Positions 1 to 64,000 of a stretch of DNA of 64,000 nt are shown piece by piece. How positions within the stretch are numbered: position 1 is the stretch's first letter; every line of letters begins with the position of its first letter. The notes beneath the pieces were generated by a model. That model was not told the DNA's origin. It did no database searches and saw only the letters and a program-made list of their open reading frames with translations. Position numbers and translations under genes: made by a program. This DNA is from Mytilus edulis (Eukaryota), in the NCBI RefSeq assembly GCF_963676685.1, contig NC_092346.1, positions 48,484,001-48,548,000 on the forward strand, given 5' to 3'.

Positions 1-1577
1 CTTCTTGTCCTTGAATGTGAATTACTGTATGTGATCTATCACCAAACGTTCACTTGCATGAGTAACACAACCGGTGTCACCTGTTAAGCAGGATCATCCA
101 TAACACCTGAAATCACCGGTTGTGTGTGGAGTAAGTGTTGCATAGTCTTTTCTATGATTTGTTTGTAGACTGATGTTAATTTTTATCTTCAACTCATGAG
201 TTTTAAAAAATCGTTTGATGAATTTTCCTCTCTATCGTTAAATTTGTACAGGCTGAGGTAAATAAGGGCAACAATAGTATACCGTTATTCAAAAGTCAAA
301 AATCGATTGCGATGAAACAAATCAGGATTACAAACTAAAACTGAGTGAAAAACATCAACCAAACCTTATAACAATCTAATATTTTATCAAAGTAGAAATA
401 AATACATAGCTTAGTTTAAAGTTTGTGTTTTATAAGAGCCCAACTGAGTAGTTTTATCTATACGTAACGTGAGTTTTGCGTTTTCAAATTATAAGCCTGG
501 TATATCTGATGAATTGCGACAACCGGTGTCGATGTTGGCTTCAGCATTCCAGTTATAAATAGTAATGAGTAAAAGATGAAAGTATAGTTAGTTAATTTCA
601 TATCTACAAACAAACAAAATCAAATTATTTGAAACACTTAATTTTCTACCAATGGAATAGTTTGCCGAAACCGTTTTTTCGTTTTACAAATTTTTATTTG
701 ACTATTTTGATTAAGGCGTACACACTTATTATTACGATTTATAAATCGACAATATTTATCTTTAATTCTTATAGTCTAGATCTTCATTGGACACTCATAA
801 TGATTTCTCTTTGTCTGTGAGTCAACCTAATATAAAAGTCTGCTAGATTTGGATATAACACTTCACACATTGTTAATGTTCCTTGATTAGACTGTTGATG
901 GTTGTTTTTCTTCTTTCTGTAGGAATGCATGATTCACATCAAGTTTGCAAAGTCCATGGATGGAGTGGGGTTAAACGTTATTTTTTATTAACTGGTAAAT
1001 GTTAAAGAGATATTCTTAACTATGAAAATACTTATAAAGTTTTAATAAAATATTTCATAGATACAACACCTATTTGATATAGACGGTTGGCTGTAGATTT
1101 AAAAATCATACGACAAACGGAATATGGCGTTCGAATTGTTACGGTCACTTACGAAGTTTACTTAAGTTAGATCCATATAAACCTATGGATCTTTTGAATA
1201 CACTTATTTGTAAAAGTAATCAACTTAAACCTGCATTAAGATCTTTGGATATTGTCCTTGTCGATACTCAAATTGATTTTGAAAACTGCATTTTATACTG
1301 TTATGAACAATACTTAAATTTTGACTAGCACAAATGCATGTCTTTCTTAGATTATCAATAATGTCTTGACACCATCCCTTGGTTTTTTTTCACTTTATTT
1401 GGTGGCTTAACGATTAATGTTAAGGTTTTCTATTGTGAAAGTCTTATACATTATCTCGAGATCCTCTGATCTCAGGTCAGTATTCGATCTTATAAGACTC
1501 ATTAGGGAGGAAGATTGAAAGTTGCCAGAAAAGCAAAACCAATAAGGAATGAAAAATTACCTTGTGATTGTTTGTGT

Positions 1578-2348
1578 TAAATAAAGGCAACAGTAGTATA
1601 CCGCTGTTCAAACTCATAAATCCATAAACAAAAAACAAAATCGGGGTTACAAACTAAAACTGAGGGAAACGCATTAAATATAAGAGGAGAACAACGACAC
1701 AACACTACAATGTAACACACACAGAAACGGACCAGGCAACAGACAAAATCCCACGAGAATAACAAATATAACATCGAAACCAAATACATGAATTTGGGAT
1801 AGACAAGTACCGTGACACGTCTTATCGCAATGTGAATTTACACTCAAAAATAAGAGAAAACAATCGACGCAACGTTAAAATGTAACACATACAGAAACGA
1901 ACTATAATATAACAATGGCCATATTCCCGACTTGGTACAGGACATTTTTAAAGAAAAATGGCGGGTTGAACCTGGTTTTGTGGCATGCCAAACCTCCCCT
2001 TTTATAGCCATGTGAAATATAACATTAAGATGATAACTCAACACCACAGGACTACAATATAAATAAATTGGAGAATACAATTGACAAAGAAACACACGAA
2101 CAACAGCCAACAAAAGGCAACAAGTTGAAAATTTTAATACGCCAGAAGTGCATTTTATCCACACAAGATCTACTAGTGATGCCCAGATACAAAAGTTTGA
2201 AAGCCGAAACAAGCACAAAGTCGAACAGCATCGAGGACCAAAAGATCAAAAAAGTTGTGCCGAAAACGGCCAGGGTTTTATGTTTGTTACCAGAACATCC
2301 TTATCATTTAGAATAATTTATACTTTTGCAAACAGTAAATTTATAAAA
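1578..2348 (-). mobile_element. Interspersed repeat (family P3) containing a decayed retrozyme/hammerhead segment
   Basis: Reverse complement of ~25105-25875; 2135-2345 aligns with the 355-bp retrozyme unit; short ends also at ~260-355, ~23345-23440 and ~40586-40753. Confidence 0.75.
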
Positions 2349-2464
2349 TTAAGTTCACAATTAAATGAAATAGATAACTATAAACTCTAAAATACTATTG
2401 GTCAAGGGGTAAATTTTGTTAAATATTTACTCGGTTAATCGTCTATCAAATAAAAAAAGAGCTA

Positions 2465-17900: not shown

Positions 17901-20900
17901 AACAATGCCTCTTCTCACAAAGGTGACACCTAAACCGAATCCATGACCATATTTATGGTAAACGTGGCGTCTTCCAATCAACCCTTGTTTAATCAGACCA
18001 GGGAAACAATCCCCTATGTCACCATAATCTTCATAACAGGAATTTAGTGCACCGTACAGTTTTGTTGCACTGCAAAGACGTCCATAGTCTGCAACAAAAG
18101 ACAAATGAATATAACATGAAGGGTAGCTTAGACTTAATCTTAATCTATAAAGACAATAAAAAGAGACACAAATTTACGGTCATACTATGATAACAATCAC
18201 TCAACGGAAGAACTGTTTTTTGTTCATTAATTTCATTTTTATTTTTCAATCAATATTTGACACTATAAAATGTAGAATCGAAATGGGAAATGTGTCAAAG
18301 AGACAACGATCAGATGAAAGTGTAAAAAACTGCCCAAGGCAAAACAGTGAATAAAAATTCCCGCAGTCAGAGGCGGGCTTAACTGGACCCTAAACACAAA
18401 TGTGTACTAGGTCAATGAAAAAGACGTTACTCAAAACACCGAAACATATTAATGACAAAATTTAAAAAAAAACAAAAAAACCCAGACATACATGACTAAC
18501 AAAGGCGAAAGGCTCCAGACTTGGAACACGCATAATTGTTCCTTGGAATTTTTGCAGCAAAATGTATGATCTTTTACCTTTTTATTTATTAGTCCTTTTT
18601 CGGTATTTCTTACCTTTAATTATAAAACTTAAAGTTTCATACAAAATGTACCACACCTAAAATTCATTGACATTATAACAGTCCCGTAAAAGTTTCTTTC
18701 TTAAAGTCGAACGTAGTGTACAATATTACTTACAGAATCCGTTATATCTGATTCCACGTCCGATAAGTTTAACACCAAGATTGTGGAAACGTTTGAATAT
18801 ACGCCCTACTTTAAATTTGTAGGCATGTCCTAAAAGTACAAGACAATAGCAAAAATATAATAAAATATATGTTCAATTCAGGGCAATAAAATGCACATAA
18901 GAACGAGCTTAAGTGCTTCCAAAGCAGGACGAAAACCCAAGCTTAGCTAACCTTTTTTCTGTAATATGCACAAATAAAAAAAATAAACATATTGCTTTGA
19001 CAACGACTGTGAAGTCGACATCAATGTGAACTGTGTCGTTAATAACTGTTTGGACACGGAGTCGGAATTCCAATTATACCAATAAAGTTTGTTCATGATA
19101 TAATCAGTATCCAAAGAGATGATATTTGTTTAGATCACGGCGTTGGCGTTACTTTACAGCTGTATTTGAACATTATATATAATGCATTACAGTTATCAAT
19201 TTGGTAATGTTTATGATTTTTTCATCACGTATTCCCAAGTTTTGATAAACCTTAGAACTGAAAGTAGAATCTGCCAAATCCGTGTATTTTTAGCATTGTT
19301 ATTAAAGGGAATTGTTTTTTCTAAAATGGTAATTGTTCCCTCTTTTTATGATGAACTTAAAATAAAAATCGGTATGAATCAGACTTTAATGAGACATACA
19401 CCAGACGACAAAATAGAAATGGAAATAATCACTTTTATTTAGATTCAAATACCTATTTCTTTTTTTGTCAACTGATTACATTTGTTCATATCAATTTTCA
19501 AAGATGTCAGAGCTTTCATGTATTAATTCTAATCGGACTCTCAAAGATCACAAGAAATGCCTGTCATTGATAAAAAGAACATGTTTTCATTTCGTTAAAT
19601 CTTTGATATAAACACACTCCCGAACAACACAAGCATGCCTTTAAGATGAAGATAAGCAATAAAAATGCAGTCTTTTTGGTTATTGTGTGGGATTTGCTCT
19701 GTTTGTACTGATTTTGTGTTATGAATGAATACCTCATACTCTTTGTTTTTCTATTATGAAAGTAAAATATGAAAGTTAGAACAGCACAAAAACACTGATG
19801 ATGGCCAACGATTAACTCATGCGCATCGATACTGTCTTTTTTTCGAACCAGATATTCGTTAATAATAAAACAAAAACACGATTGGTAATAAAGTTATTAC
19901 CTGATAAAGTAAGGGAAGTTGACAAAAATAAGTACACAAAGCCAAATAACACGAGTACAGAACTAAGGGCATCACTTAGTAAAATGACGAATTTCCTTTA
20001 CATACTAGGTTAAATACATACAATCAGTACTTGGTGTAGAATGAGTATATAGCATATCATCTTCTGAGATTATTTCAATTATTCTCTCACTTAATATAAT
20101 AATTTGGAGATGCAGTATGACTGAGACAATGAGACATTTATCCATCACATATTCAAAATGTTCACATGACGTGCATGTATTCAATCAACTCAATATCAGA
20201 CGGACACAAAAAAAATATAACGCTCAAATAGTCATACCAGTAATAAGTTTGTGCCCAGCATAACCGGCATGGTGACCATGAGAAACATAGCTTGAGCTTG
20301 AGTATGAACTTGATTTAACTACTTTAGGTTTGTAGCTATAGTCTTCTTTATTACCGGAATAATAGTCTTTACTGCCATACCCATTCGTAGCTGAAATTTG
20401 ATAAAAAAAAAAAAAAAAAAAAAACAATTATGAAACAGAAATAAAAATTTGTAAATATAGCAACTTTCAGATTTCCCCCCGATCTTTTAATGTCCATCAC
20501 AGATACATGTAATGTGCATATTATTTAAAATATTAGATAAAACTATAAAACTGTAAAAAAGACTTGCCACTGGAAAGTATTTTACATCTTATTCCAGTTT
20601 TCTAGTAACCTTTTTTTTATATATAAAAAATGCTTTTTTGTCACACAATGAATTACATTTAATTTGATTGAAATACGAAAATAATATGTGCTATCGTTGA
20701 CGATGATATCCCTCAACAGTTCATTTCACGCACATTTAAACTGAACTTATTCATAAAATTGTTTCTCAACTAAAAATTACTGTATATCAATTAAAAAAAA
20801 TATCTATTTCTATATCTTAATGCCGATGTTATTTATTAGTCCAAAATAGTTTCTATTGGGTTTTCTGCTAGTTTATGTGTTTCCCTCGATTTTGGTGTGT

Positions 20901-21460
20901 GACTTTTTTTTGTTTTGGCTTTATCGCTTTATGATTTTTGAACAACAGTCAAATAATATTTCCTTAATTACAAGATCTTATACAAAAAACGAAAAAAAAA
21001 AAAAATATGTATAACTCTTAAGGTACTGAATGGCTCTATAGAAAAAAAGATTGATATTTTTTTTTCTATTATATAAAAAGCTTTAACCTCAATTTTGGTT
21101 AGATGGAGACATTCCAGAAAAAAAATTCTGTACATTGTACACACGAGTCGCACATGAGATGACTTTAAATTAATTTATATATAGTTAAGTTTCTGGGACA
21201 TTTCAAAACTCAAAAGTCTGCAATCTATCGAGTTCTGAAAGTTGTTTAATCTTTTGTTTTTACTTTTTTTGTAAATATTTTTAGTTTTAGTACTTGGAAC
21301 ACACAAATAAAAAAAACTAACTGTCTGAAGGCAGTTAAGGTTTGAATTTAAGCTGACCAATAGAGAAAAAAAATCAAACTAATTATTAAATTAAAACTTA
21401 TCGAGAATACTTACATGCAGCAATCGCTGCAATGAGTAGGACTAGTATCCCACAAGCCAT
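2896..21460 (-). CDS. mfp-12: Gene A: secreted His/Tyr/Cys-rich modular protein, mussel foot protein-12-like, with internally duplicated body (20 coding exons, ~1110 aa)
   Basis: GT-AG exons read by eye: 21415-21460, 20238-20390, 18734-18829, 17888-18088, 17035-17247, 16493-16618, 15697-15825, 14511-14639, 13653-14090, 13164-13259, 12558-12758, 11818-12030, 9243-9368, 8210-8338, 7852-7980, 5779-5889, 5252-5380, 4224-4709, 3346-3474, 2896-2948. All introns phase 1; sum 3333 nt, open frame from signal peptide MACGILVLLIAAIAASTNG to TAA. The symbol rests on recalled architecture (His-rich helix plus Cys/His modules), not on a search. Confidence 0.8.
3346..3474 (-). CDS. Gene A exon 19 (Cys module)
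   Basis: AYQLACGDKRFWRYWSHCYSHYHSRSVCFGKLKKRRLFDLYTD. Confidence 0.88.
4224..4709 (-). CDS. Gene A exon 18 (His-rich 11-residue-repeat helix, copy 2)
   Basis: HHHALRKHLYRHRQIAHHHTRRIHRVAKSH...YHGFKIRQHRFSYGGK; 486 nt; inside track ORF 4210..4779. Confidence 0.9.
5252..5380 (-). CDS. Gene A exon 17 (Cys/His module)
   Basis: AYKLKCSRSRFYRHWGQCYHRYHSVGTCFRRLGRHHLFYRYVR. Confidence 0.88.
5779..5889 (-). CDS. Gene A exon 16 (Gly/Tyr/His module)
   Basis: EDYSEIGYSSGPIYDRSYYYSHHGFRIRHHRFSYNGI. Confidence 0.85.
6325..7592. mobile_element. PIF/Harbinger-like MITE nested in the TTAA element
   Basis: TTA-GGCCGTGTTC ... GAACACGGCC-TTA: 10-bp perfect TIR, 3-bp TTA TSD. Confidence 0.72.
6535..6823. mobile_element. 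Possible third nested MITE
   Basis: Imperfect TIRs TAAGGGAACGACCATTTGACT / AGTTATGTGGTTGCTTCTTTA with subterminal G and C runs. Confidence 0.4.
7852..7980 (-). CDS. Gene A exon 15 (Cys/His module)
   Basis: GYKLKCGRSRFYRLWGQCYHRYHSVGSCFGRLHRQHLFYRYGG. Confidence 0.88.
8210..8338 (-). CDS. Gene A exon 14 (Gly/Tyr/His module)
   Basis: GYSSVTHSAYGAGYSSGITYDFAYYKSHHGFTIRNNQFTYGGI. Confidence 0.85.
8437..8878 (-). mobile_element. Family P2 3' fragment
   Basis: Reverse complement matches 27746-27968 and continues into the 3' UTR shared with 22351-22628. Confidence 0.75.
9243..9368 (-). CDS. Gene A exon 13 (duplicate of exon 6)
   Basis: YYKLSCSKRRFYSYWNRCYGRYHSVGRCFGYLRRKHLFSYYN. Confidence 0.88.
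10150..10805. repeat. Internal tandem duplication inside the Helitron
   Basis: CAATCGTATGATAGATAACAAAAA at ~10149 and ~10430, each followed by ~250 bp of similar sequence; a sub-repeat is triplicated. Confidence 0.75.
10692..10725. mobile_element. 34-bp TIR-only mini-insertion with 7-bp target duplication
   Basis: ATTCTGT-CAGGGACTTTCTAT-gttagt-ATAGAAAGTCCCTG-ATTCTGT; empty site in the paralogous segment near 10329-10340. Confidence 0.75.
11818..12030 (-). CDS. Gene A exon 12 (duplicate of exon 5)
   Basis: YYKFGCRRSKFIRYMTSCYNKFHHASTC...; 213 nt. Confidence 0.88.
12558..12758 (-). CDS. Gene A exon 11 (duplicate of exon 4)
   Basis: YYGRLCSSTKLYGALNSCYEDYGDIGDCFPG...; 201 nt. Confidence 0.88.
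13164..13259 (-). CDS. Gene A exon 10 (duplicate of exon 3)
   Basis: GHAYRFHVGRIFNRFHRLGVELIGRGIRYNGF. Confidence 0.85.
13653..14090 (-). CDS. Gene A exon 9 (His-rich 11-residue-repeat helix, copy 1)
   Basis: ATHAILNKHLYHHRRIANNHARRIHNVAKSHVARISHVSNKH...HHRFSHGGK; 438 nt; overlaps track ORF 13591..14064. Confidence 0.9.
14511..14639 (-). CDS. Gene A exon 8 (Cys/His module)
   Basis: AYRLKCSRSRFYRHWGQCYHRYHSVGICFDRLRSLHLFYRYVG. Confidence 0.88.
15010..15128 (-). pseudogene. Decayed pseudo-exon homologous to exons 5779-5889 and 34583-34714
   Basis: Reads EDYTQ*Q*CTRSIESTFNYSNSSNHYAFRIRHHKCPYKGN: two in-frame stops and no GT donor at the homologous position. Confidence 0.65.
15231..15523 (-). 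mobile_element. Family P1 3' fragment
   Basis: AAAATTGAGAATGGAAATGGGG...GGCGGGGTTAAACATG, similar to 62756-63043. Confidence 0.78.
15697..15825 (-). CDS. Gene A exon 7 (Gly/Tyr/His module)
   Basis: GYSSGGYGAGYRSGHGGIVYDYGYYKSHHGFSIHHNRFTYGGI. Confidence 0.85.
16190..16474 (+). repeat. Interspersed repeat 3' end (SINE/LINE-like), unclassified
   Basis: GGCCTTTTATAGCTGACTATGCGGTATGGGCTTTG...GTTGTCTCATTGGCAATCATACCACATCTTCTTTTT recurs at ~45490-45662 and inverted at ~31975-32120. Confidence 0.65.
16493..16618 (-). CDS. Gene A exon 6 (Cys/His module)
   Basis: YYKLSCSKRRFYSYWNRCYGRYHSVGRCFGYLRRKHLFSYYN. Confidence 0.88.
17035..17247 (-). CDS. Gene A exon 5 (Cys module + His tail)
   Basis: YYKYGCRRSKFIRYMTSCYNKFHHASTCVSVL...HGRFRYGGK; 213 nt. 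Confidence 0.88.
17888..18088 (-). CDS. Gene A exon 4 (Cys module + Gly/His tail)
   Basis: YYGRLCSATKLYGALNSCYEDYGDIGDCFPGLIKQGLIG...GIVYGRS; 201 nt. Confidence 0.88.
18272..18535 (-). mobile_element. Family P1 3' fragment, degraded
   Basis: Diverged match to 15231-15500. Confidence 0.6.
18734..18829 (-). CDS. Gene A exon 3
   Basis: GHAYKFKVGRIFKRFHNLGVKLIGRGIRYNGF; 96 nt as in three paralogous exons. Confidence 0.85.
20238..20390 (-). CDS. Gene A exon 2 (Ser/Tyr/Gly/Lys-rich N-terminus)
   Basis: STNGYGSKDYYSGNKEDYSYKPKVVKSSSYSSSSYVSHGHHAGYAGHKLIT; CAG acceptor, GTATGA donor. Confidence 0.85.
21415..21460 (-). CDS. Gene A exon 1 (signal peptide)
   Basis: MACGILVLLIAAIAA, then T|GTAAGT donor. 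Confidence 0.85.
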
Positions 21461-21660
21461 TTTGACGGATGATGTTTTATCAGCCAAAGAACCTTCTTAT
21501 ATACTAGATTCAAAACCATATGTTGCATCTAAAATGTTTAAGTACAATAAACATATTTGTATTTTTTTCTTGTTGTATGTTAACATGTAGTATAAAGTCT
21601 GATCCGGTGTTGTATTTCCTCCTCAGAAACTTTATCAAAGTATGTTTCCAATTCATTAAG
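21461..21660 (-). promoter_or_regulatory. Gene A proximal promoter (TATA box 21497-21503, E-box 21517-21522, conserved upstream block)
   Basis: TATATAA about 40 nt upstream of ATG; ~200 bp aligns with 43563-43760. Confidence 0.7.
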
Positions 21661-23493: not shown

Positions 23494-25886
23494 CTAGAAC
23501 ACACCCGCGAAATCGCGGGGAAATAGCGCTTATGTAAACTGTAAAAAAATATAACTGGTATAATATGGACATACATATATATATATATACTATAATTACT
23601 TTTTAAAACTGTCACTGATATATTAAAAGTCATCCCAGTAAACTATTGGCAATTTATAGAAAATTACAGCAAATTTATACAATTTATTCCTAGTATATAT
23701 TTATGTAGTATACAGAAATATTGAAGTGACCGCCGTGGATAAAAAAAAATATTGCAATTGATTCATATATATAAATAGCAAATACACTTTATTTATAGCA
23801 AGGACGTATATTAGATGTTAGTTATACGTCCTTGTTTATAGTATATGTATGGTCATAGTATACAGAAAAACGCAAAAAAAAAATGATTGTTCTGTCCCAA
23901 GTACTTAAGCAAATTATGTTTAATTTCAAAACAGGCCTAAAGGGCAGCGGAAGTCTTTTATATTTTTCAAAAAGTCAGTCCGATGACGGAAACAATTTAT
24001 TTCCTCCCAAAATAACCCAAACTAAAATACTTTAAGCAAGGGTGATAAATGCTAGAACACACCCGCGAAATGGCGAGCATCCAGAGCGTGGTTGAAAGTA
24101 TGTAATGTGTTGTAGGATGATTTTTTTGTAACAGAATTAATGACTGGAGAATTTCAGGAAAGGTAATAAAAGTTATAGGCACTTGGGGACAGGACAATTG
24201 TTTTTTAACCCCTTCTCCTTTTCGGGCCAAAATTTCCAATTTTTGTTTTCTATTTATTTCAAAATGAACATACGTTTAATATGTGATGAACAAACATTAC
24301 TATAGATAAAGTGTGTTTGCTTTTTACTATCAATTTTCAGTTAACTAATCAATCCACTGTGGTCATTGATATATTATATAGACCCTCTCTATTTAATATA
24401 CTTAGTGACCCGATGAATTTTTGTAAAAGATTTTATGAATGAAGAATTTCAAAAAAAGAAAGTAATAATTACTTTTAGACATGACAATTGTTTTCCTAGC
24501 CAGGCTCCTAATTTTTTTCCTCAAAACTCCTATAATTTTGTTCTATTGATTTTAATAATGTTAGTAGCGTTTATCTGTATATATATTATGAACATACATT
24601 ACTATAAATAAAGTGTATTTGCTTTTTACTATCAACTCCCAATTTACTAATCATTGACATATTATATAGACCCTCTCTATTTAACAAAGTACAGAAAAAA
24701 ACGCAAACCGGATGTCTAGTCTGACTTAAAATTTCGTCCAATGACTGAAAAATATCCGGACGCAGTTTTTTTCGTTTTTCTCCCAAAATAACCCAAACTG
24801 AATAATCACAAGAATGGATGACAAATGCGACAATACATGGTACCTATAGGACAAAGAGGCATGATGATTAATTTATTGTTGAAGGAAGAGAAGCGACACA
24901 CAAAATGAGGTCTTCTCGTTTCATATATTCAAATGTGACGTAATTTTTAATGCCTTTTCACCATCGTATGTGACGTCATTTTCATAATTTACTGCGTTGA
25001 GGCCTGGACTGAGTCGGGTGTGTCTAGTCTGTGTTATGTATTCGTGTTTGTTTTATGTAATGAGTTAATATTTCAGTTTCATTATGTATATCTGTTATAT
25101 TTATTTGATAAAATTTACTGTTTGCAATATCATTAATTGTTCTAAATAATAAGGATATTCTTATCCCAAGCATAGAAACATAGCCGTATTTGACAAAACC
25201 TTTTTCAACTTTTGATCTTCAGTGCTGTACAACTTTGTACCTTTTTTCGCTTTCGATCTTTTATATCTGGGCGTCACTGGTGAGTCTTGTGTGGACGAGG
25301 CGCGTTTTTGGCGTATTGAGTTTTAAACCTGATGCTTTTTGTTATTCATTAATCATGTGTTTCATTGTCTAATACGGTCTCCTATTTATTTGTATTGTAG
25401 TCCTGTAATATTATGTTGTCATTTCAATGTTATATTTAACATTGCCATTAAAGTGTGAGGTTTGGCATGCCACAAAACCAGGTTCAACCCACCATTTTTT
25501 CCTTTAAAAATGTCCTGTACCAAGTCAGGAATATGGCCATTGTTATATTATAGTTCGTTTCTATGTGTGTTACAATTTAACGTTGCGTCGTTTGTTTTCT
25601 CTTATTTTTGAGTGTAAATTGACATTGCGATAAGACGTGTCACGGTACTTGTCTATCCCAAATTCATGTATTTGGTTTTGATGTTATATTTGTTATTCTC
25701 GTGGGATTTTGTCTGATGCTTGGTCCGTTTCTGTGTGTGTTACATTGTAGTGTTGTGTCGTTGTTCTCCTCTTATATTTATGCGTTTCCCTCAGTTTTAG
25801 TTTGTTACCCCGATTTTGTTTTTTGTCCATGGATTTATGAGTTTGAACAGCGGTATACTACTGTTGCCTTTATTTAATAGTATAGA
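23494..25886 (-). mobile_element. Non-autonomous Helitron of the same family, with a second internal 3' end and a nested insertion
   Basis: CTAG plus hairpin at 23494-23519 and again at 24052-24077; 24690-24921 is the reverse complement of ~9911-10135; terminal 11 bp at 25876-25886. Confidence 0.72.
24922..25875 (+). mobile_element. Family P3 copy inserted into the Helitron 5' terminus
   Basis: Splits CTCGTTT|AATAGTATAGA; decayed hammerhead GCGTCA-CTGGTGA-GTC...GAC-GAGG at 25271-25314. Confidence 0.72.
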
Positions 25887-39300: not shown

Positions 39301-42300
39301 GGGAAAGGCCAAAGACACAACAACCCGACCATAGAAAAAAACAACTAACATGAAAGACGACTGTAAACTGTTCGTGATTTAAAATAAAGAAGAAAAAGGT
39401 AAAAGTTGCAATTATAAAATGACATTTAATTGTATCTTATAGCACTTTTCTAATTTGTTCATTCTCTGTATCTGTACTTCAATATTTGACACGAAAGCAA
39501 AATTTAAAATGAAGAATGCAACTTGTATTTGAAACTACACGTTTTTATTAGCACTTTCTGTTAGCTTCAATAGCTTTATTTCAATAATTGGAAATATTCA
39601 TACAAACTTTGTCACATTTAATTCAATGATAAACTAATTTATCCTGAAAAGTAGGTTTTTTAATTCTAATGTAACGTAGTAAAAAGTAAAACCACAAAAA
39701 TACTGAACTTAGAGGAAAATCAATTTGGAAAGTCCATAATCACATGGCAATTTCAAATAACAAAACGCATAAAAAACGAATGGAAAAGAGCTGTCATATT
39801 CCTGACTTGGTACAGACATTTTCAAATGTAGAAAATGGTGGATTAAACCTGGTTTTATAGCGCTAACACTCTCTCTTTGATGACAGTCTAATCAAATTCT
39901 GTTATATTTACATTGATGCGTTAACTAAACAGACACAATAAATAAATAGTCAAAATATGGGTACATCAGTCATCATCGTAAAACAATTTTAAAAGGGACA
40001 ATTCAACAGAACACAAAAACATCTATCTACAAACACTTTCACACTTTTCTGTGTCTGACGTCAGAAAATTTTATATGTCTCATAAAATTTGTCGTTCAAT
40101 GTGCATGCAAACAATTTCAAAATTTACATAGGCAATGCTAGCACATAGGACATAGGGTTAAAACATCAAAAGCATATAAGAACAAACATCAGAAACAGAC
40201 CGAGATTGAAAATAGTTCAAAAGTTACATGAAGAATTCATAAGAATCCACAAATAGCCTATACAATAAATTGTATTACTAGTACTCACAGAATCCGTTAT
40301 ATCTGATTCCACGTCCAATAAGTTCAACACCAAGTCTGTGGAAACGTCTGAATATATGACTGACTTTAAATCTGTAGGCGTGTCCTAGATATACAAGAAT
40401 ATTGCGAAAATAATAAGATATTTGTTGTATGTAAGAAATTATGATAATTAATAAAATGTGTGTTTAAAATAAAGACAAGCTCAGTTTTTTATTCTCTTTT
40501 GCTCTTTTAAACTTTTATGATTCATTACTAGAGCTTTTCGTTGTGTCTGTTAAAGACGAAACGCTCGTCTTGTGTACACAGTTATAAATAAAGGCAACAG
40601 TAGTATACCGCTGTTCAAAGCTCATAAATCTATGGACAAAAAACAAAATCGGGGTAACAAACTAAAACTGAGGGAAACGCATTAAATATTAGAGGAGAAC
40701 AACGACACAACATTAAAATGTAACACACACAGCAACGGACTAAGCATTAGACATGGTATTTTTTTATTAGTTATTTCAAGCTACCATATCACAACGAAGT
40801 AAACTATGACATTACCTTGAAAAAAACCCAAATTATTCGATATAAAGAGAAGTTATGTATTTGTATTGGTTATGAATTTATGCATTGAGAATAAGACTTC
40901 AAGGTCGAATGTTTGACGTATCTATTTGTTATATGGGTGTGAAGTGTACTAAGGGTTATAGAAACAATAATACTGTTGAGTCAAGACGTCGACTATTATG
41001 ATCATGTTATTTTCAAGCTGCCAAATGTTGTAAAATCAAATTTTCTTTAGTACGTAGCTGTATATTCATACACTTATTGAAACATGATGTATCATGTTTA
41101 TCTTCCGTCTTCCATATAAATTCTTTTAGTAAAATGAATGAAACTACTGTATAGTCATAGTTATCAAAAGTACCAGGGTTATAATTTTATACGCCAGACG
41201 CGCGTTTCGTCTACATAAGACTCATCAGTGACGCTCAGATCGAAATAGTTAAAAAGCCAAACAAATACAAAGTTGAAGAGCATTGAGGACCCAAAATTCC
41301 AAAAAGTTGTGCCAAATACGGCTAAGGTAATCTACTCCTGGGGTAAGAAAAACCTTAGTTTTTCGAAAAATTCAAAGTTTTGTAAACAGACAATTTATAA
41401 AAATGACCATATAATTGATATTCATGTCAACACCGAAGTGCTGACTACTGGGCTGGTGATACCCTCGGGGACGAAACGTCCACCAGCAGTGGCATCGACC
41501 CAGTGGTGTAAATAGTTATCAAAAGTACCAGGGTTATAATTTTATACGCCAGACGCGCGTTTCGTCTACATAAGACTCATCAGTGACGCTCAGATCGAAA
41601 TAGTTAAAAAGCCAAACAAATACAAAGTTGAAGAGCATTGAGGACCCAAAATTCCAAAAAGTTGTGCCAAATACGGCTAAGGTAATCTACTCCTGGGGTA
41701 AGAAAAACCTTAGTTTTTCGAAAAATTCAAAGTTTTGTAAACAGACAATTTATAAAAATGACCATATAATTGATATTCATGTCAACACCGAAGTGCTGAC
41801 TACTGGGCTGGTGATACCCTCGGGGACGAAACGTCCACCAGCAGTGGCATCGACCCAGTGGTGTAAATAGTTATCAAAAGTATCAGGGTTATAATTTTAT
41901 ACGCCAGACGCGCGTTTCGTCTACATAAGACTCATCAGTGACGCTCAGATCGAAATAGTTAAAAAGCCAAACAAATACAAAGTTGAAGAGCATTGAGGAC
42001 CCAAAATTCCAAAAAGTTGTGCCAAATACGGCTAAGGTAATCTACTCCTGGGGTAAGAAAAACCTTAGTTTTTCGAAAAATTCAAAGTTTTGTAAACAGA
42101 CAATTTATAAAAATGACCATATAATTGATATTCATGTCAACACCGAAGTGCTGACTACTGGGCTGGTGATACCCTCGGGGACGAAACGTCCACCAGCAGT
42201 GGCATCGACCCAGTGGTGTAAATAGTTATCAAAAGTACCAGGGTTATAATTTTATACGCCAGACGCGCGTTTCGTCTACATAAGACTCATCAGTGACGCT

Positions 42301-43562
42301 CAGATCGAAATAGTTAAAAAGCCAAACAAATACAAAGTTGAAGAGCATTGAGGACCCAAAATTCCAAAAAGTTGTGCCAAATACGGCTAAGGTAATCTAC
42401 TCCATACGTTTGTTCAAATATGATATGTATGTCTATATAATATGCCAGTCTTCTGTATATTTTGGAAATGCTTATTATGTATGTAAGTTAACTTGGTAAT
42501 TGATTCAACATAGTTTGTTATATTGTGACAATATATGTTTAATAGTATATGTTCACATACCCGGGTTAACGGTCTTGAAAAAGATAACTTAAAACTTCAA
42601 TATCTAATAGTCATACCAGTAATAAGTTTATGTCCAGCATAACCGGCAGGATGACCGTGAGAAACATAGCTTGAGCTTGAGTATGAACTTGATTTAACTA
42701 ATTTAGGTTTGTAGCTGTATGAGTTGACACCTTTGTAGCTGTAGTCGTCTTTATCAGGATAATAGTCACTACTGCCATACCCATTAGTAGCTAAAATGTA
42801 ATATAAATTATTTGTTAATACAAATAAAAAAAATCAAACGGGATATCTTGAAAGCATGGTGTTTTTCCGATCTTACAGCTTGAACTACTGATAAGTTGAA
42901 TATTATTCGGATAAAAATATCTATAAAAATGTTTGTAAGGCCTGCCACAAGGTATGGTGACCTAAATGTATATCTTTTAAAAGAAATATACTTTACACTC
43001 ACAATAGGTAGAATAACAGTGAAGAGTCTAACTAATCTTATAATTTTTAAATATAATAAAGACGAAATGCTCAATTTGTTTGATTTCCACAATGGCATAA
43101 AGTGCACCAGCAGTTGTACAGTCCTACTGTTAGCAATGATGGTAACTGTTAATCGGTGAATTGTTTCAGATATTGAATATTGCTTGCAGGACGAGAACAC
43201 GTTAACTATACGCATATAAAACGTATAATATTTTTGTAAATACCCAAATTAAAATAGAAGCGTTTTGTTTTAAGTGTAATTAAACAAGTGTAGAAAATAT
43301 AGAGAGAGTGGTTATCCTATTTAGCCATCAATATGACTTAGAGCCAACAAGTAATCTAAGCTTTTCACTTTTGGAAAGGCTTTAGTCTTTTGTTTAAGAA
43401 TTTCAATTACTAGTAACAATAAAAAAAATCATTGTTAGAAAATGTTCAAATTGTAGATTCATTCTTAATTATCAGTAAAATTTATAAGAAAAATAGAAAT
43501 CCCCATGAATACTTACATGCAGCAATCGCTGCAATAAGAAGGACTAGTATCCCACAAGCCAT
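30350..43562 (-). CDS. mfp-12: Gene B: paralog of gene A, mussel foot protein-12-like (15 coding exons, ~744 aa)
   Basis: Exons 43517-43562, 42617-42790, 40289-40384, 39039-39239, 38173-38385, 37397-37522, 36745-36864, 36205-36411, 35734-35862, 34583-34714, 34026-34154, 33171-33650, 32558-32686, 31622-31672, plus 30350-30351 (GA of a split TGA). All phase 1, sum 2235 nt; same signal peptide as gene A. Symbol tentative. Confidence 0.8.
30635..30938. repeat. MITE-like foldback element
   Basis: AATGATTGTAATATTTTTTCTGTCTA / TAGACAGAAAAAATATTACAGTCATT inverted arms with inner GTGCAC arms, followed by an ATAATTTAATT/AATTAAATTAT-bounded segment. Confidence 0.55.
31622..31672 (-). CDS. Gene B exon 14 (acidic tail)
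   Basis: GYDDEDDYVPAGKSAYY then T|GTAAGA. Confidence 0.82.
32558..32686 (-). CDS. Gene B exon 13 (Cys/His module)
   Basis: AYQLTCGDKRFYNYWSDCYSHYHSRSVCFGKLRKRHLFDVYTD; AAG acceptor. Confidence 0.85.
33171..33650 (-). CDS. Gene B exon 12 (His-rich 11-residue-repeat helix)
   Basis: DTHAILNKHLYLHKKIANHHVIRIHNVAKTHVATISRVANKH...HHRFSYGGK; 480 nt. Confidence 0.9.
34026..34154 (-). CDS. Gene B exon 11 (Cys/His module)
   Basis: AYKLKCSRSRFYRLWGQCYHRYHSVGTCFGRLRSHHLFYRYLG. Confidence 0.88.
34583..34714 (-). CDS. Gene B exon 10 (Gly/Tyr/His module)
   Basis: DDYSVVDGDVYGSDYGSGPIFDYSYYNSHHGFAIRHHRFSYNGI. Confidence 0.85.
35734..35862 (-). CDS. Gene B exon 9 (Cys/His module)
   Basis: GYQLKCSRSRFYTLWGQCYHRYHSVGSCFGRLRRQHLFYRYGG. 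Confidence 0.88.
35735..36830. repeat. Tandem duplication (~540-549 bp) inside gene B
   Basis: TCCACCG at 35735, 36284 and 36824 bounds two near-identical exon-intron-exon blocks. Confidence 0.88.
36205..36411 (-). CDS. Gene B exon 8 (chimeric Cys module + Gly/Tyr/His module)
   Basis: GYRLKCSRSRFYTLWGQCYHRYHSVGSCFGRLRRQHLFYRYGG-ITYDYGYYKSHHGFAIVNNRFTYGGI; 207 nt, open, intact splice sites. Confidence 0.82.
36745..36864 (-). CDS. Gene B exon 7 (Gly/Tyr/His module)
   Basis: GYSSVGYGAGYSGGIIYDYGYYKSHHGFAIVNNRFTYGGI. Confidence 0.85.
37397..37522 (-). CDS. Gene B exon 6 (Cys/His module)
   Basis: YYKLSCSKRRFYSYWNRCYGRYHSVGRCFGYLRRKHLFSYYN. Confidence 0.88.
38173..38385 (-). CDS. Gene B exon 5
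   Basis: FYKFGCRRHKFIRYMTSCYNKIHHASTCVSLL...; 213 nt. Confidence 0.88.
39039..39239 (-). CDS. Gene B exon 4
   Basis: YYGRLCSATKLYSALNSCYDDYGDISDCFPGLIKQG...; 201 nt. Confidence 0.88.
39681..40255. repeat. Interspersed repeat, unclassified
   Basis: First ~140 bp (…CTGTCATATTCCTGACTTGGTACAG) recur at ~60265-60364 and inverted at ~28310-28445; far boundary approximate. Confidence 0.5.
40289..40384 (-). CDS. Gene B exon 3
   Basis: GHAYRFKVSHIFRRFHRLGVELIGRGIRYNGF. Confidence 0.85.
41191..41234 (-). ncRNA. Type I hammerhead ribozyme, copy 1
   Basis: GCGUCA-CUGAUGA-GUC(UUAUGUA)GAC-GAAA-CGCGCG-UC^-UGGCGU: intact core, helix I, helix II, palindromic helix III; predicted cut between 41197 and 41196. 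Confidence 0.88.
41546..41589 (-). ncRNA. Type I hammerhead ribozyme, copy 2
   Basis: Identical to 41191-41234. Confidence 0.88.
41901..41944 (-). ncRNA. Type I hammerhead ribozyme, copy 3
   Basis: Identical to 41191-41234. Confidence 0.88.
42256..42299 (-). ncRNA. Type I hammerhead ribozyme, copy 4
   Basis: Identical to 41191-41234. Confidence 0.88.
42617..42790 (-). CDS. Gene B exon 2
   Basis: STNGYGSSDYYPDKDDYSYKGVNSYSYKPKLVKSSSYSSSSYVSHGHPAGYAGHKLIT. Confidence 0.85.
43517..43562 (-). CDS. Gene B exon 1 (signal peptide)
   Basis: MACGILVLLIAAIAA, GTAAGT donor. Confidence 0.85.
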
Positions 43563-43760
43563 TTTGACGGATGCACTCTCGTCAATCAAAGAATTTACTT
43601 ATATACCTAGGCAAAAACCATATGTTGCATCTTATTGTTTTAAAACAATAAAACTATTTGTATATTAGTCTTAGTGTATGTTAACATGTCTTATAACGTC
43701 TGATCCTGTGTTGAATTTCCTCCTCAGAAAATATATCTAAGTATGTTTCCAATTCATTAC
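43563..43760 (-). promoter_or_regulatory. Gene B proximal promoter (TATA box 43599-43605, E-box 43619-43624)
   Basis: TATATAA about 40 nt upstream of ATG; conserved with the gene A promoter. Confidence 0.7.
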
Positions 43761-49129: not shown

Positions 49130-49482
49130 TTGTATGCTAACTTAAAATAGTCTGTTATTTGTGTCGATTGGTTACTGTTTCACTTACGTATACTCCAAAT
49201 ATCCTTTAATTTATTTATATATCAACAATACAATATGAGATACCAGTCTTATGATTTACATGTCTAAACATTAAATGGAGGTGATATCTTTTGGTTTTCT
49301 TCTGTTGTAATGTTGCGGTGTTATTGTCGTGAACCCCATACATCCTTTATTTACAAAGCACGAAAATGTCGGCGTTCACCTCAAAAGCTATCCAAACCTT
49401 TGAACAGACTTACAAGAAGGGATAAAGATACGTTTCTGTTGTGAGGTCATTAAAGATGACATATTTTTGCTGGTATATTGAT

Positions 49483-50110
49483 TTACTTATAGGGTCTTTG
49501 CATCGGAAAAAACCACACTTATTCTTAAATAAATTGTTGGCATGACACGGGATATGTTCTTCTCATATATTGTATGATGGTATGATACTAAACCCCTAAC
49601 AGGAGGGATTGTGCTTGGTATGCATATGCTGGAGACATAATCTTTAAATCAGTTCAATTGAGGTCTAGATCTGGCATGTCATTAACTGCTAGTAATCCTT
49701 TGTAATTAATGCAGCATTGTTATTTTCCTCTTTTGTTTTGTATTATGTCATTGGAATCAGGCTTCTTTTAAACTGTGTTTTACTGTGCGTGTTGCTGTAT
49801 GTTACTTTTTTCTGCATTGGCTAGAGGTTTATGTATACGGGAGGGTTGAAATCTCATAAAAAAAAGTTTAACCCCGCCGCATTTTTGTGTCTATTCCAAA
49901 TCAGGAGCCTCTGTCCTTTGTTAGACATGTATGGTTTTAGTTCACTTTTATATTTTGGAATTAAGTATGCCGTTCATTATCACTGAACTAGTACGTTTTT
50001 TTGTTAAAAGGCCGGCTGAACCATGCCTTCGGGTGTGGGAGTTGACGACCCATTGGTGGCCTTCGTCTGGTTTTGCACTTTGGTCGGGTTGTTGTCTATT
50101 TTCAATTTTA
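49483..50110 (+). mobile_element. Family P1 fragment, opposite orientation, degraded
   Basis: Reverse complement of ~62756-63420 (GGGTCTTTGCATCGGAA...GGTCGGGTTGTTGTC). Confidence 0.7.
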
Positions 50111-63000: not shown

Positions 63001-64000
63001 TGACTTGGGACAGGCGCAAAATTGCGGCGGGGTTAAACATGTTTATGAGATCTCAACCCTCCCCCTATACCTCTAGCCAATGTAGAAAAGTAAAACAATA
63101 ACAATACGCACATTAAAATTCAGTTCAAGAGAAGTCCGAGTCTGATGTCAAAAGATGTAACAAAAGAAAATAAATAAAATGACAATAATACATAAATAAC
63201 AACAGACTACTAGCAGTTAACTGACATGCCAGCTCCAGACCTCAATTAAACTGATTGAAAGATTATGTCTTCATCATATGAATATCAGGTACAATCCCTC
63301 CCGTTAGGGGTTTAGTATCATACTATCATAAAATATATGAGAAGAACATAACCCGTGTCATGCCAACAACTGTTTTTTTAGAAATAAATGTGTTTAGTTC
63401 CGATGCAAAGACCCTATCAGTGAATCAATGTTAAAGCCAAAATATGCAATCTTTAATGACCTGACAACAGTATCGTAACTATATCCCCTTTTAATAAGTC
63501 TATTTAAAGGTTTTGTTAGTTTCTGAGGAGAATACTGACATTTTTGTGCTTTATAAAGAATATTTCCATAAAATTTTGGATGTGAAATACCTGAACGTAT
63601 AAGATGTCTGCATGTTGAGTTATATTTACGAATTATTTCCTTATACCGGTGATAAAATTTAGTAAATGTTTTGACCATAGTGCATTTTTTATTTTTTTTT
63701 ATTAAAAACTTTAAAAAAAAATATACACTTATTCAATGGTTAAACCATATATCACCGCATTATTATTGCAAGCCGTTAAATTCGAATTATTGTACAACCA
63801 CAATGATCATTCTACACTGATCTATGAACGAAGATTTTACGAGCATGGCTTTTGTTAACATCAACTTAAATAAGTCCTTTTAATTAATTTCAAGAATGTA
63901 AAACTATGTATTCTTTCATTTTAGTTTTTTTTTTTCATTCAAAATACTTTATAGGCTACTACCATGGTTCATCTTCCATTGTTCATGGTGGTGATTACAT
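51013..64000 (+). CDS. Gene C: divergent paralog of the same foot-protein family with many Cys/His and Gly/Tyr/His modules; 3' end outside the window
   Basis: Exons 51013-51058, 52059-52202, 52816-52911, 53438-53638, 53928-54134, 55078-55215, 55599-55664, 56061-56174, 56742-56852, 57364-57486, 57902-57967, 58333-58446, 59015-59125, 59661-59783, 60095-60190, 60828-60941, 61229-61348, 61665-61787, 62093-62188, 62629-62742, 63955-(64000). All phase 1; exons 1, 3 and 4 have the same lengths (46, 96, 201 nt) as in A/B; signal peptide MTRGVFTFLLVVCVTATITEG. Confidence 0.8.
52059..52202 (+). CDS. Gene C exon 2
   Basis: ATITEGYGSYRHGGIVGHTGLYKNHLTSYKDLLTGYGNDHAAGHIYHS; donor GTACAC is weak, so the 3' boundary is less certain. 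Confidence 0.75.
52816..52911 (+). CDS. Gene C exon 3
   Basis: GHFHKIVVGRLYRRFHQFGIDLIGNGLRYKNY; 96 nt. Confidence 0.85.
53438..53638 (+). CDS. Gene C exon 4
   Basis: YFARKCEPLKLYNAFSSCFNEYGRIEDCFPGLIKDGLIG...GIIYHKT; 201 nt. Confidence 0.87.
53928..54134 (+). CDS. Gene C exon 5
   Basis: VYHYHVRSLEFIWTMTSCYNSFHHASICVQKLQKQGLIG...HGRFSYHGH. Confidence 0.85.
55078..55215 (+). CDS. Gene C exon 6 (Cys/His module)
   Basis: AYKLSCSTTRFYSVWNKCYNHYHSVGRCFGYLQQKHLFVSYSSTSI. Confidence 0.87.
55599..55664 (+). CDS. Gene C exon 7 (short Gly/His module)
   Basis: GYHGYDQLGFKIVHGGFSYHGK; AAGTAG tandem acceptor. Confidence 0.82.
56061..56174 (+). CDS. Gene C exon 8 (Cys module)
   Basis: AYTLKCSESRFYKVWDDCYGHYHKGSLCFDRLFKQGLF. 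Confidence 0.87.
56742..56852 (+). CDS. Gene C exon 9 (Gly/Tyr/His module)
   Basis: GYNVDSDYAHGDIDYLGYYNSHHGFHLVDGGFTYKDV. Confidence 0.85.
57364..57486 (+). CDS. Gene C exon 10 (Cys/His module)
   Basis: AYKLSCKTDRFYRSWHDCYDSYHSVDVCFGRLYKSHLFVSL. Confidence 0.87.
57902..57967 (+). CDS. Gene C exon 11 (copy of exon 7)
   Basis: GYHGYDQLGFKIVHGGFSYHGK. Confidence 0.82.
58333..58446 (+). CDS. Gene C exon 12 (copy of exon 8)
   Basis: AYTLKCSESRFYKVWDDCYGHYHKGSVCFDRLFKQGLF. Confidence 0.87.
59015..59125 (+). CDS. Gene C exon 13 (copy of exon 9)
   Basis: GYNVDSDYAHGDIDYLGYYNSHHGFHLVDGGFTYKDV. Confidence 0.85.
59661..59783 (+). CDS. Gene C exon 14 (copy of exon 10)
   Basis: AYKLSCKTDRFYRSWHDCYDSYHSVDVCFGRLYKSHLFVSL. 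Confidence 0.87.
60095..60190 (+). CDS. Gene C exon 15
   Basis: DHGDVHTVHTNYHGYKYLGFRVNHRRFTYHGK. Confidence 0.83.
60828..60941 (+). CDS. Gene C exon 16 (Cys/His module)
   Basis: AYRLKCSTRRFYGLWDDCYNHYHSRSLCFNKIYKQHFF. Confidence 0.87.
61229..61348 (+). CDS. Gene C exon 17
   Basis: GYYHGASSIVNGGNYVDDFGYYKAHHGFSIVNGGFSYNGA. Confidence 0.85.
61665..61787 (+). CDS. Gene C exon 18 (Cys/His module)
   Basis: AYKLSCSRTRFYKAWRSCYGTYHSVDVCYGRLLNDHLFVAL. Confidence 0.87.
62093..62188 (+). CDS. Gene C exon 19 (GC donor)
   Basis: DHGDNYSVHTNYHGYKYLGFKLHHRRFSYHGK then G|GCAAGT; paralog of exon 15. Confidence 0.8.
62629..62742 (+). CDS. Gene C exon 20 (copy of exon 16)
   Basis: AYRLKCSTRRFYGLWDDCYNHYHSRSLCFNKIYKQHFF. 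Confidence 0.87.
62756..63675 (-). mobile_element. 5'-truncated Penelope-like retroelement (family P1): RT C-terminus plus 3' UTR
   Basis: Track ORF 63394..63678 (KTFTKFYHRY...GISHPKFYGNILYK) resembles a PLE RT C-terminus; CATAGT direct repeat at both ends; same 3' end recurs in the window. Confidence 0.72.
63955..64000 (+). CDS. Gene C exon 21 (partial, cut by window end)
   Basis: GYYHGSSSIVHGGDY..., paralog of exon 17. Confidence 0.8.

What the first reader, a model, noticed from the sequence alone, without database searches (positions are those of the whole stretch)
41157..42403. Four intact hammerhead ribozymes (retrozyme array) in sense orientation inside intron 2 of gene B
Seen: 3.5 near-identical 355-bp units, each with CUGAUGA-stem II-GAAA-CGCGCG-UC^ and a closing helix I on the minus strand, which is the strand gene B is transcribed from. 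Gene A's intron 2 has no such array. Known: metazoan non-LTR retrozymes, reported from Mytilus among others, are tandem 170-400 nt units with type I hammerheads that yield circular RNAs, and a short palindromic helix III favours dimeric cleavage. Inference: B pre-mRNA would be cut up to four times and release three 355-nt monomers that could circularise. This could make a gland-specific promoter a source of retrozyme RNA, or damp gene B output. The non-integer copy number and near identity suggest recent insertion by reverse transcription around a circular template.
Basis: partly seen in the sequence, partly recalled or inferred. Interest (0 to 1): 0.85.

Follow-up and report, generated by a model that had tools for sequence, protein, structure and literature searches.

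The report
Known mussel hammerhead retrozyme in intron
This is a real but ordinary young copy of the already-described mussel "retrozyme" (a self-cleaving-RNA retroelement with thousands of copies), which landed in sense orientation in an intron of a secreted-protein gene and is absent from that site in a related sample.

Summary
Window 41157-42403 is a 3.5-copy, 355-bp tandem array (99% identity). It carries four identical type I hammerheads on the minus strand (Rfam RF00163, 33.0 bits against a cut-off of 34, full length).

It lies in sense orientation inside intron 2 (42616-40385) of a minus-strand gene. That gene model rests on splice signals and exon conservation with paralogue gene A, not on RNA. 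Gene A's intron 2 lacks the array.

The unit belongs to the mussel non-LTR retrozyme family described by Cervera & de la Peña (2020). It has at least 1389 first-look matches across this genome at 96-99% identity. It is visibly homologous to their cloned, self-cleaving Mg353.

One DNA contig from a related organism joins 41155 directly to 42403, an empty site with a single TATG. So the insertion is recent or polymorphic.

In 20 arrays examined (19 independent), the sense 3' end is fixed 38-48 nt past the cut site, while the 5' end varies. This fits target-primed reverse transcription starting at a fixed site, in the manner of Penelope-like elements.

In one RNA run the family is abundant while gene B and its unique intron sequence have zero depth. 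Retrozyme RNA therefore does not depend on gene B. Cutting of B pre-mRNA is plausible but untested.

The scan has noted many such arrays in this genome, some of them intronic.

The parts
41157..42403 (-). Retrozyme array of 3.5 units of 355 bp. In sense order it is a partial unit (monomer positions 214-355), three full units, then a 40-nt tail (monomer positions 1-40).
   Evidence: Tandem Repeats Finder; self-blast at 99.8-100%; unit boundaries by blast of the monomer.
42262..42403 (-). 5'-truncated first unit (monomer 214-355), ending with hammerhead 1.
42256..42299 (-). Hammerhead 1 (type I). The predicted cut is after C 42262.
   Evidence: RF00163 at 33.0 bits; exact motif.
41901..41944 (-). 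Hammerhead 2. The predicted cut is after C 41907.
41546..41589 (-). Hammerhead 3. The predicted cut is after C 41552.
41191..41234 (-). Hammerhead 4. The predicted cut is after C 41197.
41157..41196 (-). 3' tail of the element, 40 nt after the last cut site (...CCCTGGTACTTTTGATAACTAT). All 20 arrays examined end at this same place.
42403..42406 (-). TATG at the sense-5' junction (target-site duplication or microhomology).
   Evidence: Sequence; the empty-site contig has one copy (X5 record 18).
41156..41159 (-). TATG at the sense-3' junction. Its TAT is also the element's own terminal TAT.
40385..42616 (-). Intron 2 of gene B (predicted), holding the array 213 nt after the donor and 772 nt before the acceptor.
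   Evidence: Donor GTATGA and acceptor AG read; exon conservation with gene A. No RNA support.
42617..42790 (-). Gene B exon 2 (predicted), Tyr/Ser/Lys-rich.
43517..43562 (-). Coding part of gene B exon 1 (predicted): MACGILVLLIAAIAA signal peptide, with a TATA box about 40 nt upstream.
   Evidence: conserved with 21405-21658.
40289..40384 (-). Gene B exon 3 (predicted).
   Evidence: conserved with 18724-18873.

Best explanation
The array is one recent, probably still polymorphic, insertion of the known Mytilus non-LTR retrozyme family. Shown here: it has 3.5 near-identical 355-bp units with four intact type I hammerheads. It sits in sense orientation in the predicted intron 2 of a secreted Tyr/His/Lys-rich protein gene. 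It is bounded by a 4-bp TATG repeat, and the site is empty in a contig from a related organism. Inferred: family RNA is transcribed elsewhere, cut by paired (double) hammerheads, and ligated into 355-nt circles. A reverse transcriptase of the Penelope-like kind then copied it by target-primed synthesis. Synthesis started at a fixed site about 40-47 nt downstream of the cut site, ran around the template 3.5 times, and stopped at a variable point. When gene B is transcribed, its pre-mRNA will carry four sense hammerheads and may be partly cut. With the slow rate measured for a sister copy (about 0.1 per min, PMC7229834), the effect on gene B is probably small. It is one of many such genic insertions, with no sign of a dedicated function.
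For: Array and hammerheads. Family membership: at least 188 scored matches and 1389 first-look candidates on many chromosomes at 96-99% identity. Word depth in the millions in three DNA runs. The published cloned mussel retrozyme Mg353 shares the hammerhead (one loop-2 letter differs) and long identical blocks such as CCACTGGGTCGATGCCACTGCTGGTGGA and CCGAGGGTATCACCAGCCCAGTAGTCAGC (compared by eye). Published for the family: about 5000 copies in 350-390-bp repeats, in vitro self-cleavage, and circular RNAs up to about 1% of RNA. Insertion: X5 contig record 18 joins 41155 to 42403, with TATG at both junctions. Mechanism: all 20 arrays end at monomer position 38-48, with 5' starts at 18 different positions. 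Units differ by 1.06 letters on average within an array and 7.35 between arrays. The tail motif CCTGGTA..T.TGAT.A is shared with the second subfamily. Penelope-like elements and their non-autonomous derivatives make head-to-tail partial tandems with shared 3' ends (PMC8557442). GIY-YIG elements are abundant in this genome, with 858 candidates. RNA: family reads at depth 130-500 with a 3-7:1 strand bias and no pile-up of ends at the cut sites, against zero on gene B. Double hammerhead.
Against: No experiment or read shows cleavage of this copy or of gene B pre-mRNA. The gene model has no RNA support, because the one RNA run laid does not express the gene. The filled allele is seen only in the assembly, since short-read contigs break at the repeat. 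The autonomous partner was not identified: the two retrozyme-type hammerheads found near GIY-YIG remnants are antisense to decayed frames, and intact elements could not be fetched. A linear multimeric template with a defined 3' end would give the same array anatomy as a circle. Near identity within arrays could also partly come from unequal crossing-over.
Confidence: 0.85

Rival explanations
1. The intronic sense array materially changes gene B. Co-transcriptional cleavage separates exon 2 from exon 3 and lowers mRNA output, or gene B's promoter becomes a significant tissue-specific source of 355-nt circular retrozyme RNA.
For: Four intact hammerheads in sense orientation lie between the exon 2 donor and the exon 3 acceptor. 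A sister copy self-cleaves in vitro. The array is absent from the paralogue and from one related sample, so alleles with and without it may exist to compare. Xenopus retrozymes are mildly depleted from introns, which hints at a cost.
Against: The reported rate is slow, about 0.1 per min. Family RNA is abundant where gene B is silent, and this array's private letters are nearly absent from it: 3 of 416, 1 of 355 and 2 of 78 reads (from another organism's RNA). About 43% of Xenopus copies are intronic, and other intronic sense arrays are noted in this genome. So the arrangement is expected by chance. There is no expression data for gene B.
Confidence: 0.12
2. The array is a DNA-level satellite, generated and spread by unequal crossing-over or segmental duplication rather than by retrotransposition.
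For: It has a tandem structure. Very long arrays of the same unit exist elsewhere, for example more than 20 units on C3 and C12. L043 and L044 are one array duplicated together with its flanks.
Against: There are dozens of short arrays on different chromosomes with unrelated flanks. All share the same 3' end and have different 5' truncations. The empty site is precise, with a 4-bp repeat. The family is abundantly transcribed.
Confidence: 0.03
3. The array at this locus is an assembly artefact, and the true allele is the empty site.
For: No independent read set was shown to span a flank-array junction. An empty-site contig exists (X5). Contigs in X4 and X11 stop at 41155 and 41156 with 68-88 further unplaced letters.
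Against: The junctions have the same anatomy as 19 other insertions, with a canonical 3' end, 5' truncation and microhomology. The window has no N and the units are in clean register. X5 is labelled as a different organism from the best DNA holders.
Confidence: 0.03

Closest known systems
Mytilus galloprovincialis non-LTR retrozyme (Cervera & de la Peña, Nucleic Acids Res 2020, PMC7229834; cloned genomic copy 'Mg353')
   Same: It is a roughly 355-bp low-GC tandem unit. The type I hammerhead differs from Mg353 by one loop-2 letter, and the helix III palindrome is the same. Long blocks of identical sequence are shared. Copy number is in the thousands and the RNA is abundant.
   Different: This unit is a sister subfamily. 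The roughly 45 nt after the cut site and parts of the body differ from Mg353, while Mg353-like RNA appears as loose ends. The specific locus (an intron of a secreted-protein gene) and its empty allele are new details, not a new kind.
Newt satellite 2, Schistosoma Sm-alpha and other double-hammerhead repeats (Rfam RF00163 seed type)
   Same: Type I topology with a helix III that has no usable loop (ACGCGCGU), so that two tandem copies must pair to form the active structure (PMC7761336).
   Different: The host lineage and the unit sequence differ.
Non-autonomous derivatives of Penelope-like elements (PMC8557442; preprint 10.64898/2026.07.22.740005)
   Same: Head-to-tail partial tandem insertions, 5' truncation, a defined 3' end, hammerheads near the 3' part, insertion with short microhomology or into microsatellites (L042 sits in a TTAC repeat), and co-occurrence with many GIY-YIG elements.
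   Different: No autonomous element sharing this 3' module was found here. The intact element seen (L051/L052) has a different hammerhead.
Conserved intronic hammerheads of amniotes (de la Peña & García-Robles 2010, cited in PMC7229834)
   Same: A hammerhead in sense orientation within an intron of a protein-coding gene.
   Different: Those are single, ultraconserved, non-repeated motifs. This is a young, multi-copy, presence/absence-variable transposon insertion with no conservation.

Membership tests
Hammerhead ribozyme type I (Rfam RF00163) | Conserved catalytic core: CUGANGA, GAAA, and a cleavage triplet NUH. | tested here: met
   CUGAUGA ... GAAA ... GUC is exact in all four copies.
Hammerhead ribozyme type I (Rfam RF00163) | Score at or above the family's gathering threshold. 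| tested here: not met
   33.0 bits against 34. The match is full length with E 6.6e-6, so the shortfall is 1 bit. It comes from helix I letters that differ from the consensus but still pair.
Hammerhead ribozyme type I (Rfam RF00163) | Three helices around the core, with helix I open. | tested here: met
   Helix I has 6 bp and helix II has 4 bp. Helix III is an 8-nt palindrome that forms in trans, and the minimum-energy dimer is the double hammerhead at -31.5 kcal/mol. The single copy does not fold into the active form on its own.
Hammerhead ribozyme type I (Rfam RF00163) | Self-cleavage activity. | not testable with these tools
   Shown in vitro only for a sister genomic copy in PMC7229834.
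Metazoan non-LTR retrozyme | Short (about 170-400 bp) low-GC tandem repeats, each with a type I hammerhead and without LTR, PBS or PPT. | tested here: met
   355-bp units, four hammerheads. The unit sequence is AT-rich.
Metazoan non-LTR retrozyme | Dispersed multi-copy family in the genome. | tested here: met
   At least 1389 candidates, with arrays on C1-C14.
Metazoan non-LTR retrozyme | Homology to the described mussel element. | tested here: met
   Compared by eye with Mg353 in the paper's supplement.
Metazoan non-LTR retrozyme | Expressed as monomer-length linear and circular RNA. | tested here: inconclusive
   Family RNA is abundant and reads run across the cut site without a pile-up of ends. 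This fits circles or multimers, but short reads cannot show circularity and cannot be assigned to this locus.
Element mobilised by Penelope-like elements | Fixed 3' end with variable 5' truncation and partial tandem structure. | tested here: met
   20 of 20 arrays.
Element mobilised by Penelope-like elements | 3' region shared with an autonomous RT/GIY-YIG element of the same genome. | tested here: inconclusive
   Two of 30 GIY-YIG loci have a retrozyme-type hammerhead nearby, but on the opposite strand and beside decayed frames.

The most novel reading that the evidence does not exclude
The hammerhead plus the roughly 45 nt that follow its cut site (…GUC|UGGCGUA…CCUGGUA..U.UGAU.A.UAUUUAC) may form the conserved 3' module at which the mobilising reverse transcriptase starts on the circular RNA. 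Every genomic array ends inside a 10-nt window there, whatever its length or 5' end, and the motif is kept between two mussel subfamilies whose bodies differ. That would supply the 'conserved motif' that the 2020 review (PMC7761336) said metazoan retrozymes lack. It would give genomic evidence that the template is not the hammerhead-cut linear monomer, which would end at GUC, but a circle or multimer read from a fixed entry point. It is a property of the family, not of this locus.
Probability: 0.45. Interest if true: 0.5.

Novelty: already known. Interest (0 to 1): 0.22.

Why it matters
As a locus it matters little. It is one of thousands of copies of a published element, and intronic copies are common. 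Two points are of some use. First, the insertion appears presence/absence variable in a gene with a signal peptide and a byssus-like composition. This offers a natural pair of alleles to test whether sense hammerheads in an intron lower gene output in vivo. Second, the family-wide fixed 3' end and conserved tail constrain how animal retrozymes are reverse-transcribed and which autonomous element moves them.

Tried and rejected
- The Rfam gathering-threshold scan of the whole window found nothing. The hammerheads only appear in E-value mode.
- Folding a single 61-nt hammerhead or the 355-nt monomer gave no unusual stability (z +0.41, z -0.79). Single-copy folding therefore neither supports nor refutes the ribozyme.
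- I looked for read ends at the cut sites in raw RNA reads and found none listed. The two 'begin' places, 41173 and 41505 (monomer positions 24 and 47), coincide with the edges of homology to the second subfamily, so I read them as mapping edges rather than RNA ends.
- I tried to name gene B. The His-rich exon was searched alone, by reference, and gave one unnamed 155-aa ENA protein. The Pfam call failed on a frame slip and was not repeated. 'Foot' and 'gland' therefore remain unverified.
- I tried to find the autonomous partner. The GIY-YIG search gave 858 candidates. Of the 30 loci, L051/L052 carry a different hammerhead. L059 and L080 carry the retrozyme-type hammerhead, but antisense to decayed frames.
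- The diverged relatives in the window (2110-2360 minus strand, 25070-25350 plus strand) have dead cores and are not hammerheads.
- Whether the X4 and X11 contigs at 41155/41156 are empty or filled alleles could not be resolved from the table.


Full report
OBSERVATION

Tandem Repeats Finder gives one array at 41157-42403, with period 355, 3.5 copies, 99% matches and no indels. A self-comparison of the window gives 99.8-100% identity between units.

The motif CTGATGA-N13-GAAACGCGCGTC occurs exactly four times, all on the minus strand and 355 nt apart; shuffles give none.

At its curated thresholds Rfam reports nothing in the window. In E-value mode all four sites match Hammerhead_1 (RF00163) over the whole model at 33.0 bits, one bit under the gathering score of 34. 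E is 6.6e-6 on the region and 2.4e-4 on the window.

Read from the sequence, the catalytic core, a 4-bp helix II and a 6-bp helix I are all present. Helix III is the 8-nt palindrome ACGCGCGU with no loop. A single copy does not fold into the active form. Two copies cofold at -31.5 kcal/mol against 2 x -10.0 for single copies, and the minimum-energy structure is the double hammerhead, with helices I and III formed in trans.

The predicted cuts fall after C 42262, 41907, 41552 and 41197.

GENE CONTEXT

Gene B was read on the minus strand:
- A TATA box lies near 43605, followed by an ATG at 43562-43560.
- Exon 1 encodes the signal peptide MACGILVLLIAAIAA and ends at 43517, with donor GTAAGT.
- Exon 2 is 42790-42617 (Tyr/Ser/Lys-rich, donor GTATGA).
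- Exon 3 is 40384-40289 (acceptor AG, donor GTGAGT).
- Phase 1 is consistent across both junctions.

Sensitive blast against the paralogous gene A gives conservation islands that coincide with just these three exons: 43507-43759 with 21405-21658, 42603-42807 with 20224-20407, and 40279-40426 with 18724-18873. Nothing alignable lies between them. More 3' exons of A and B are also collinear on the same strand.

The array therefore lies in sense orientation inside predicted intron 2 (42616-40385). It begins 213 nt after the donor and ends 772 nt before the acceptor. Gene A's intron 2 has no array.

This gene model has no RNA support. The one RNA run laid shows zero depth on all three exons.

That search returned one unnamed 155-aa protein. 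Calling gene B a foot or gland gene therefore remains inference from composition.

WHAT IT IS

The exact monomer between two cut sites (window:41552-41906:-) finds at least 188 scored matches, out of 1389 first-look candidates, in the window's own 1.37-Gb genome. They lie on most chromosomes at 96-99% identity, in arrays of 1 to more than 20 units. In three DNA runs the array's word depth is in the millions.

Cervera & de la Peña (PMC7229834) described about 5000 type I hammerheads in 350-390-bp repeats of Mytilus galloprovincialis. They showed in vitro self-cleavage of a cloned genomic copy (about 0.1 per min) and circular RNAs up to about 1% of RNA.

Their supplement prints that clone, Mg353. 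By eye it shares the hammerhead, with one loop-2 letter different, and long identical blocks with the unit here. It differs in the roughly 45 nt after the cut site.

The same Mg353-like sequence appears as loose ends flanking only the hammerhead core in the RNA reads, at 41188/41236 and 42253/42301. Two sister subfamilies are therefore expressed. The element is a member of a published family.

INSERTION HISTORY

In DNA contigs of a run labelled as a different organism (X5), a 479-nt contig at single-copy depth joins 42596-42403 directly to 41155-40868 (record 18). This is the empty site, lacking exactly the 1247 nt of the array.

TATG stands at both junctions of the filled allele (42406-42403 and 41159-41156) and once in the empty one. 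Its TAT is also the element's own terminal TAT. It can therefore be read as a 4-bp target-site duplication or as priming microhomology.

Contigs from two other runs stop at 41155 and 41156 with 68-88 further unplaced letters, and I could not decide their state.

Units within the array differ at one position. The nearest arrays elsewhere are 99% identical. The insertion is young.

MECHANISM

I cut out 20 arrays (19 independent, because L043 and L044 are one duplicated locus) together with the window's own array.

Every array ends on the sense 3' side at monomer position 38-48, with the sequence ...CCTGGTACTTTTGATAACTAT[T][T][AC..]. That is about 40 nt past the hammerhead cut.

The sense 5' ends lie at 18 different positions: 20, 38, 42, 60, 86, 123, 143, 150, 162, 201, 214, 218, 234, 273, 279, 295, 296 and 300. 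I chose the arrays by their listed 5' partial units and not by their 3' ends, so the 3' result is not a selection effect.

A fixed 3' end with 5' truncation is the signature of target-primed reverse transcription. An end 40 nt beyond GUC means the template was not the hammerhead-cut linear monomer. It was a circle or multimer entered at a fixed site.

Three further observations fit this:
- Units differ by 1.06 letters on average within an array and by 7.35 between arrays. This fits several turns on one monomer template, although unequal crossing-over could contribute.
- One array (L042) sits in a TTAC microsatellite that matches the element's terminal TTTAC.
- The tail motif is conserved in the second subfamily.

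Penelope-like elements and their non-autonomous derivatives produce exactly such partial tandems with shared 3' ends and a bias toward microsatellites (PMC8557442). A 2026 preprint argues that vertebrate retrozymes derive from the pseudo-LTRs of these elements.

GIY-YIG elements are abundant in this genome, with 858 candidates, but I could not identify the partner. An intact element (L051/L052) has a different hammerhead. The two retrozyme-type hammerheads near GIY-YIG remnants lie antisense to decayed frames.

RNA EVIDENCE

In raw RNA reads of run X22, labelled as a third organism, the array has depth 130-500 with the first mate on the + strand and 37-157 with it on the - strand. If the library is of the usual stranded kind, most RNA is of the hammerhead-sense strand.

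Depth is zero on the unique intron sequence and on the exons. No pile-up of molecule ends is listed at the cut sites. The array's private letters are nearly absent: 3 of 416, 1 of 355 and 2 of 78 reads.

Family RNA therefore comes from elsewhere and is mostly uncut or re-ligated across the cut site, in line with the published predominance of circles. Short reads cannot prove circularity or assign reads to this locus.

FUNCTIONAL CLAIM

It follows from the anatomy that transcription of gene B would produce a pre-mRNA with four sense hammerheads. Complete cutting would release three 355-nt monomers. Whether this happens to a meaningful extent is not shown.

Three points argue against anything special:
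- The measured rate for the sister copy is slow.
- About 43% of Xenopus retrozyme copies are intronic, only mildly depleted.
- This scan has 95 notes on hammerhead retrozymes, those listed all in this genome, and at least three note an intronic copy, two of them as sense to the host gene. I did not test those notes.

VERDICT

The feature is real and correctly recognised, and it belongs to an already published family. The locus-specific idea that it acts as a promoter-driven circle source or damper of gene B is possible but unsupported, and such an arrangement is expected by chance.

The empty allele makes the question testable. The family-wide fixed 3' end is the most useful by-product of this work.

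Noticed in passing
window 40585-40753 (also 1578-1745 and 25710-25876): This is a 169-bp piece of another very high-copy, transcribed repeat, with word depth in the millions and RNA depth 90-230. It has a sharp end at 40585, whereas other copies run on past 40753. A contig of run X11 lacks 40588-40808, so this piece also seems presence/absence variable.
   Followed up: partly
window 1577-2352 and 25100-25877 (inverted): This roughly 780-bp repeat is 87% identical between its two copies. One end is the 169-bp piece above. The other end is a 75%-identical relative of the retrozyme unit with a decayed hammerhead core (CTAGTAG or CTGGTGA, with GAAAC and GTC lost). It looks like an older, larger retrozyme-like element.
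   Followed up: partly
window 41188-41236 and 42253-42301; L059:834-865; L080:194-225: A second expressed retrozyme subfamily, the published Mg353 type, shares only the roughly 49-nt hammerhead and the tail motif CCTGGTA..T.TGAT.A with this unit. Copies lie beside, and antisense to, decayed GIY-YIG frames in two of 30 loci.
   Followed up: partly
L051:2600 and L052:2599: A Penelope-like element with a long open frame (595-755 aa) carries a different type I-like hammerhead (CTGATGACGGTGCCC..GGCACCGAAACATGTC) about 1.1 kb downstream of its GIY-YIG domain.
   Followed up: no
window 63275-63339 (-): A SECIS_1-like match scores 30.9 bits (cut-off 35) inside a repeat that also occurs at 49350-50096. 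Naiad Penelope-like elements of clams are reported to encode selenoproteins (PMC8557442), so this may be the SECIS of such an element.
   Followed up: no
window 41505 and 41173: RNA first mates begin here in excess (51 of 182 and 17 of 78). The places are monomer positions 47 and 24, near the family's genomic 3' end. They also coincide with the edges of homology to the second subfamily, so a mapping edge is the likelier reading.
   Followed up: partly
L043 and L044 (G000:C5:37573200-37577000 and 37699900-37703600): These two loci hold the same retrozyme array with the same flanks in inverted orientation, 127 kb apart. This is a segmental inverted duplication that postdates the insertion.
   Followed up: no
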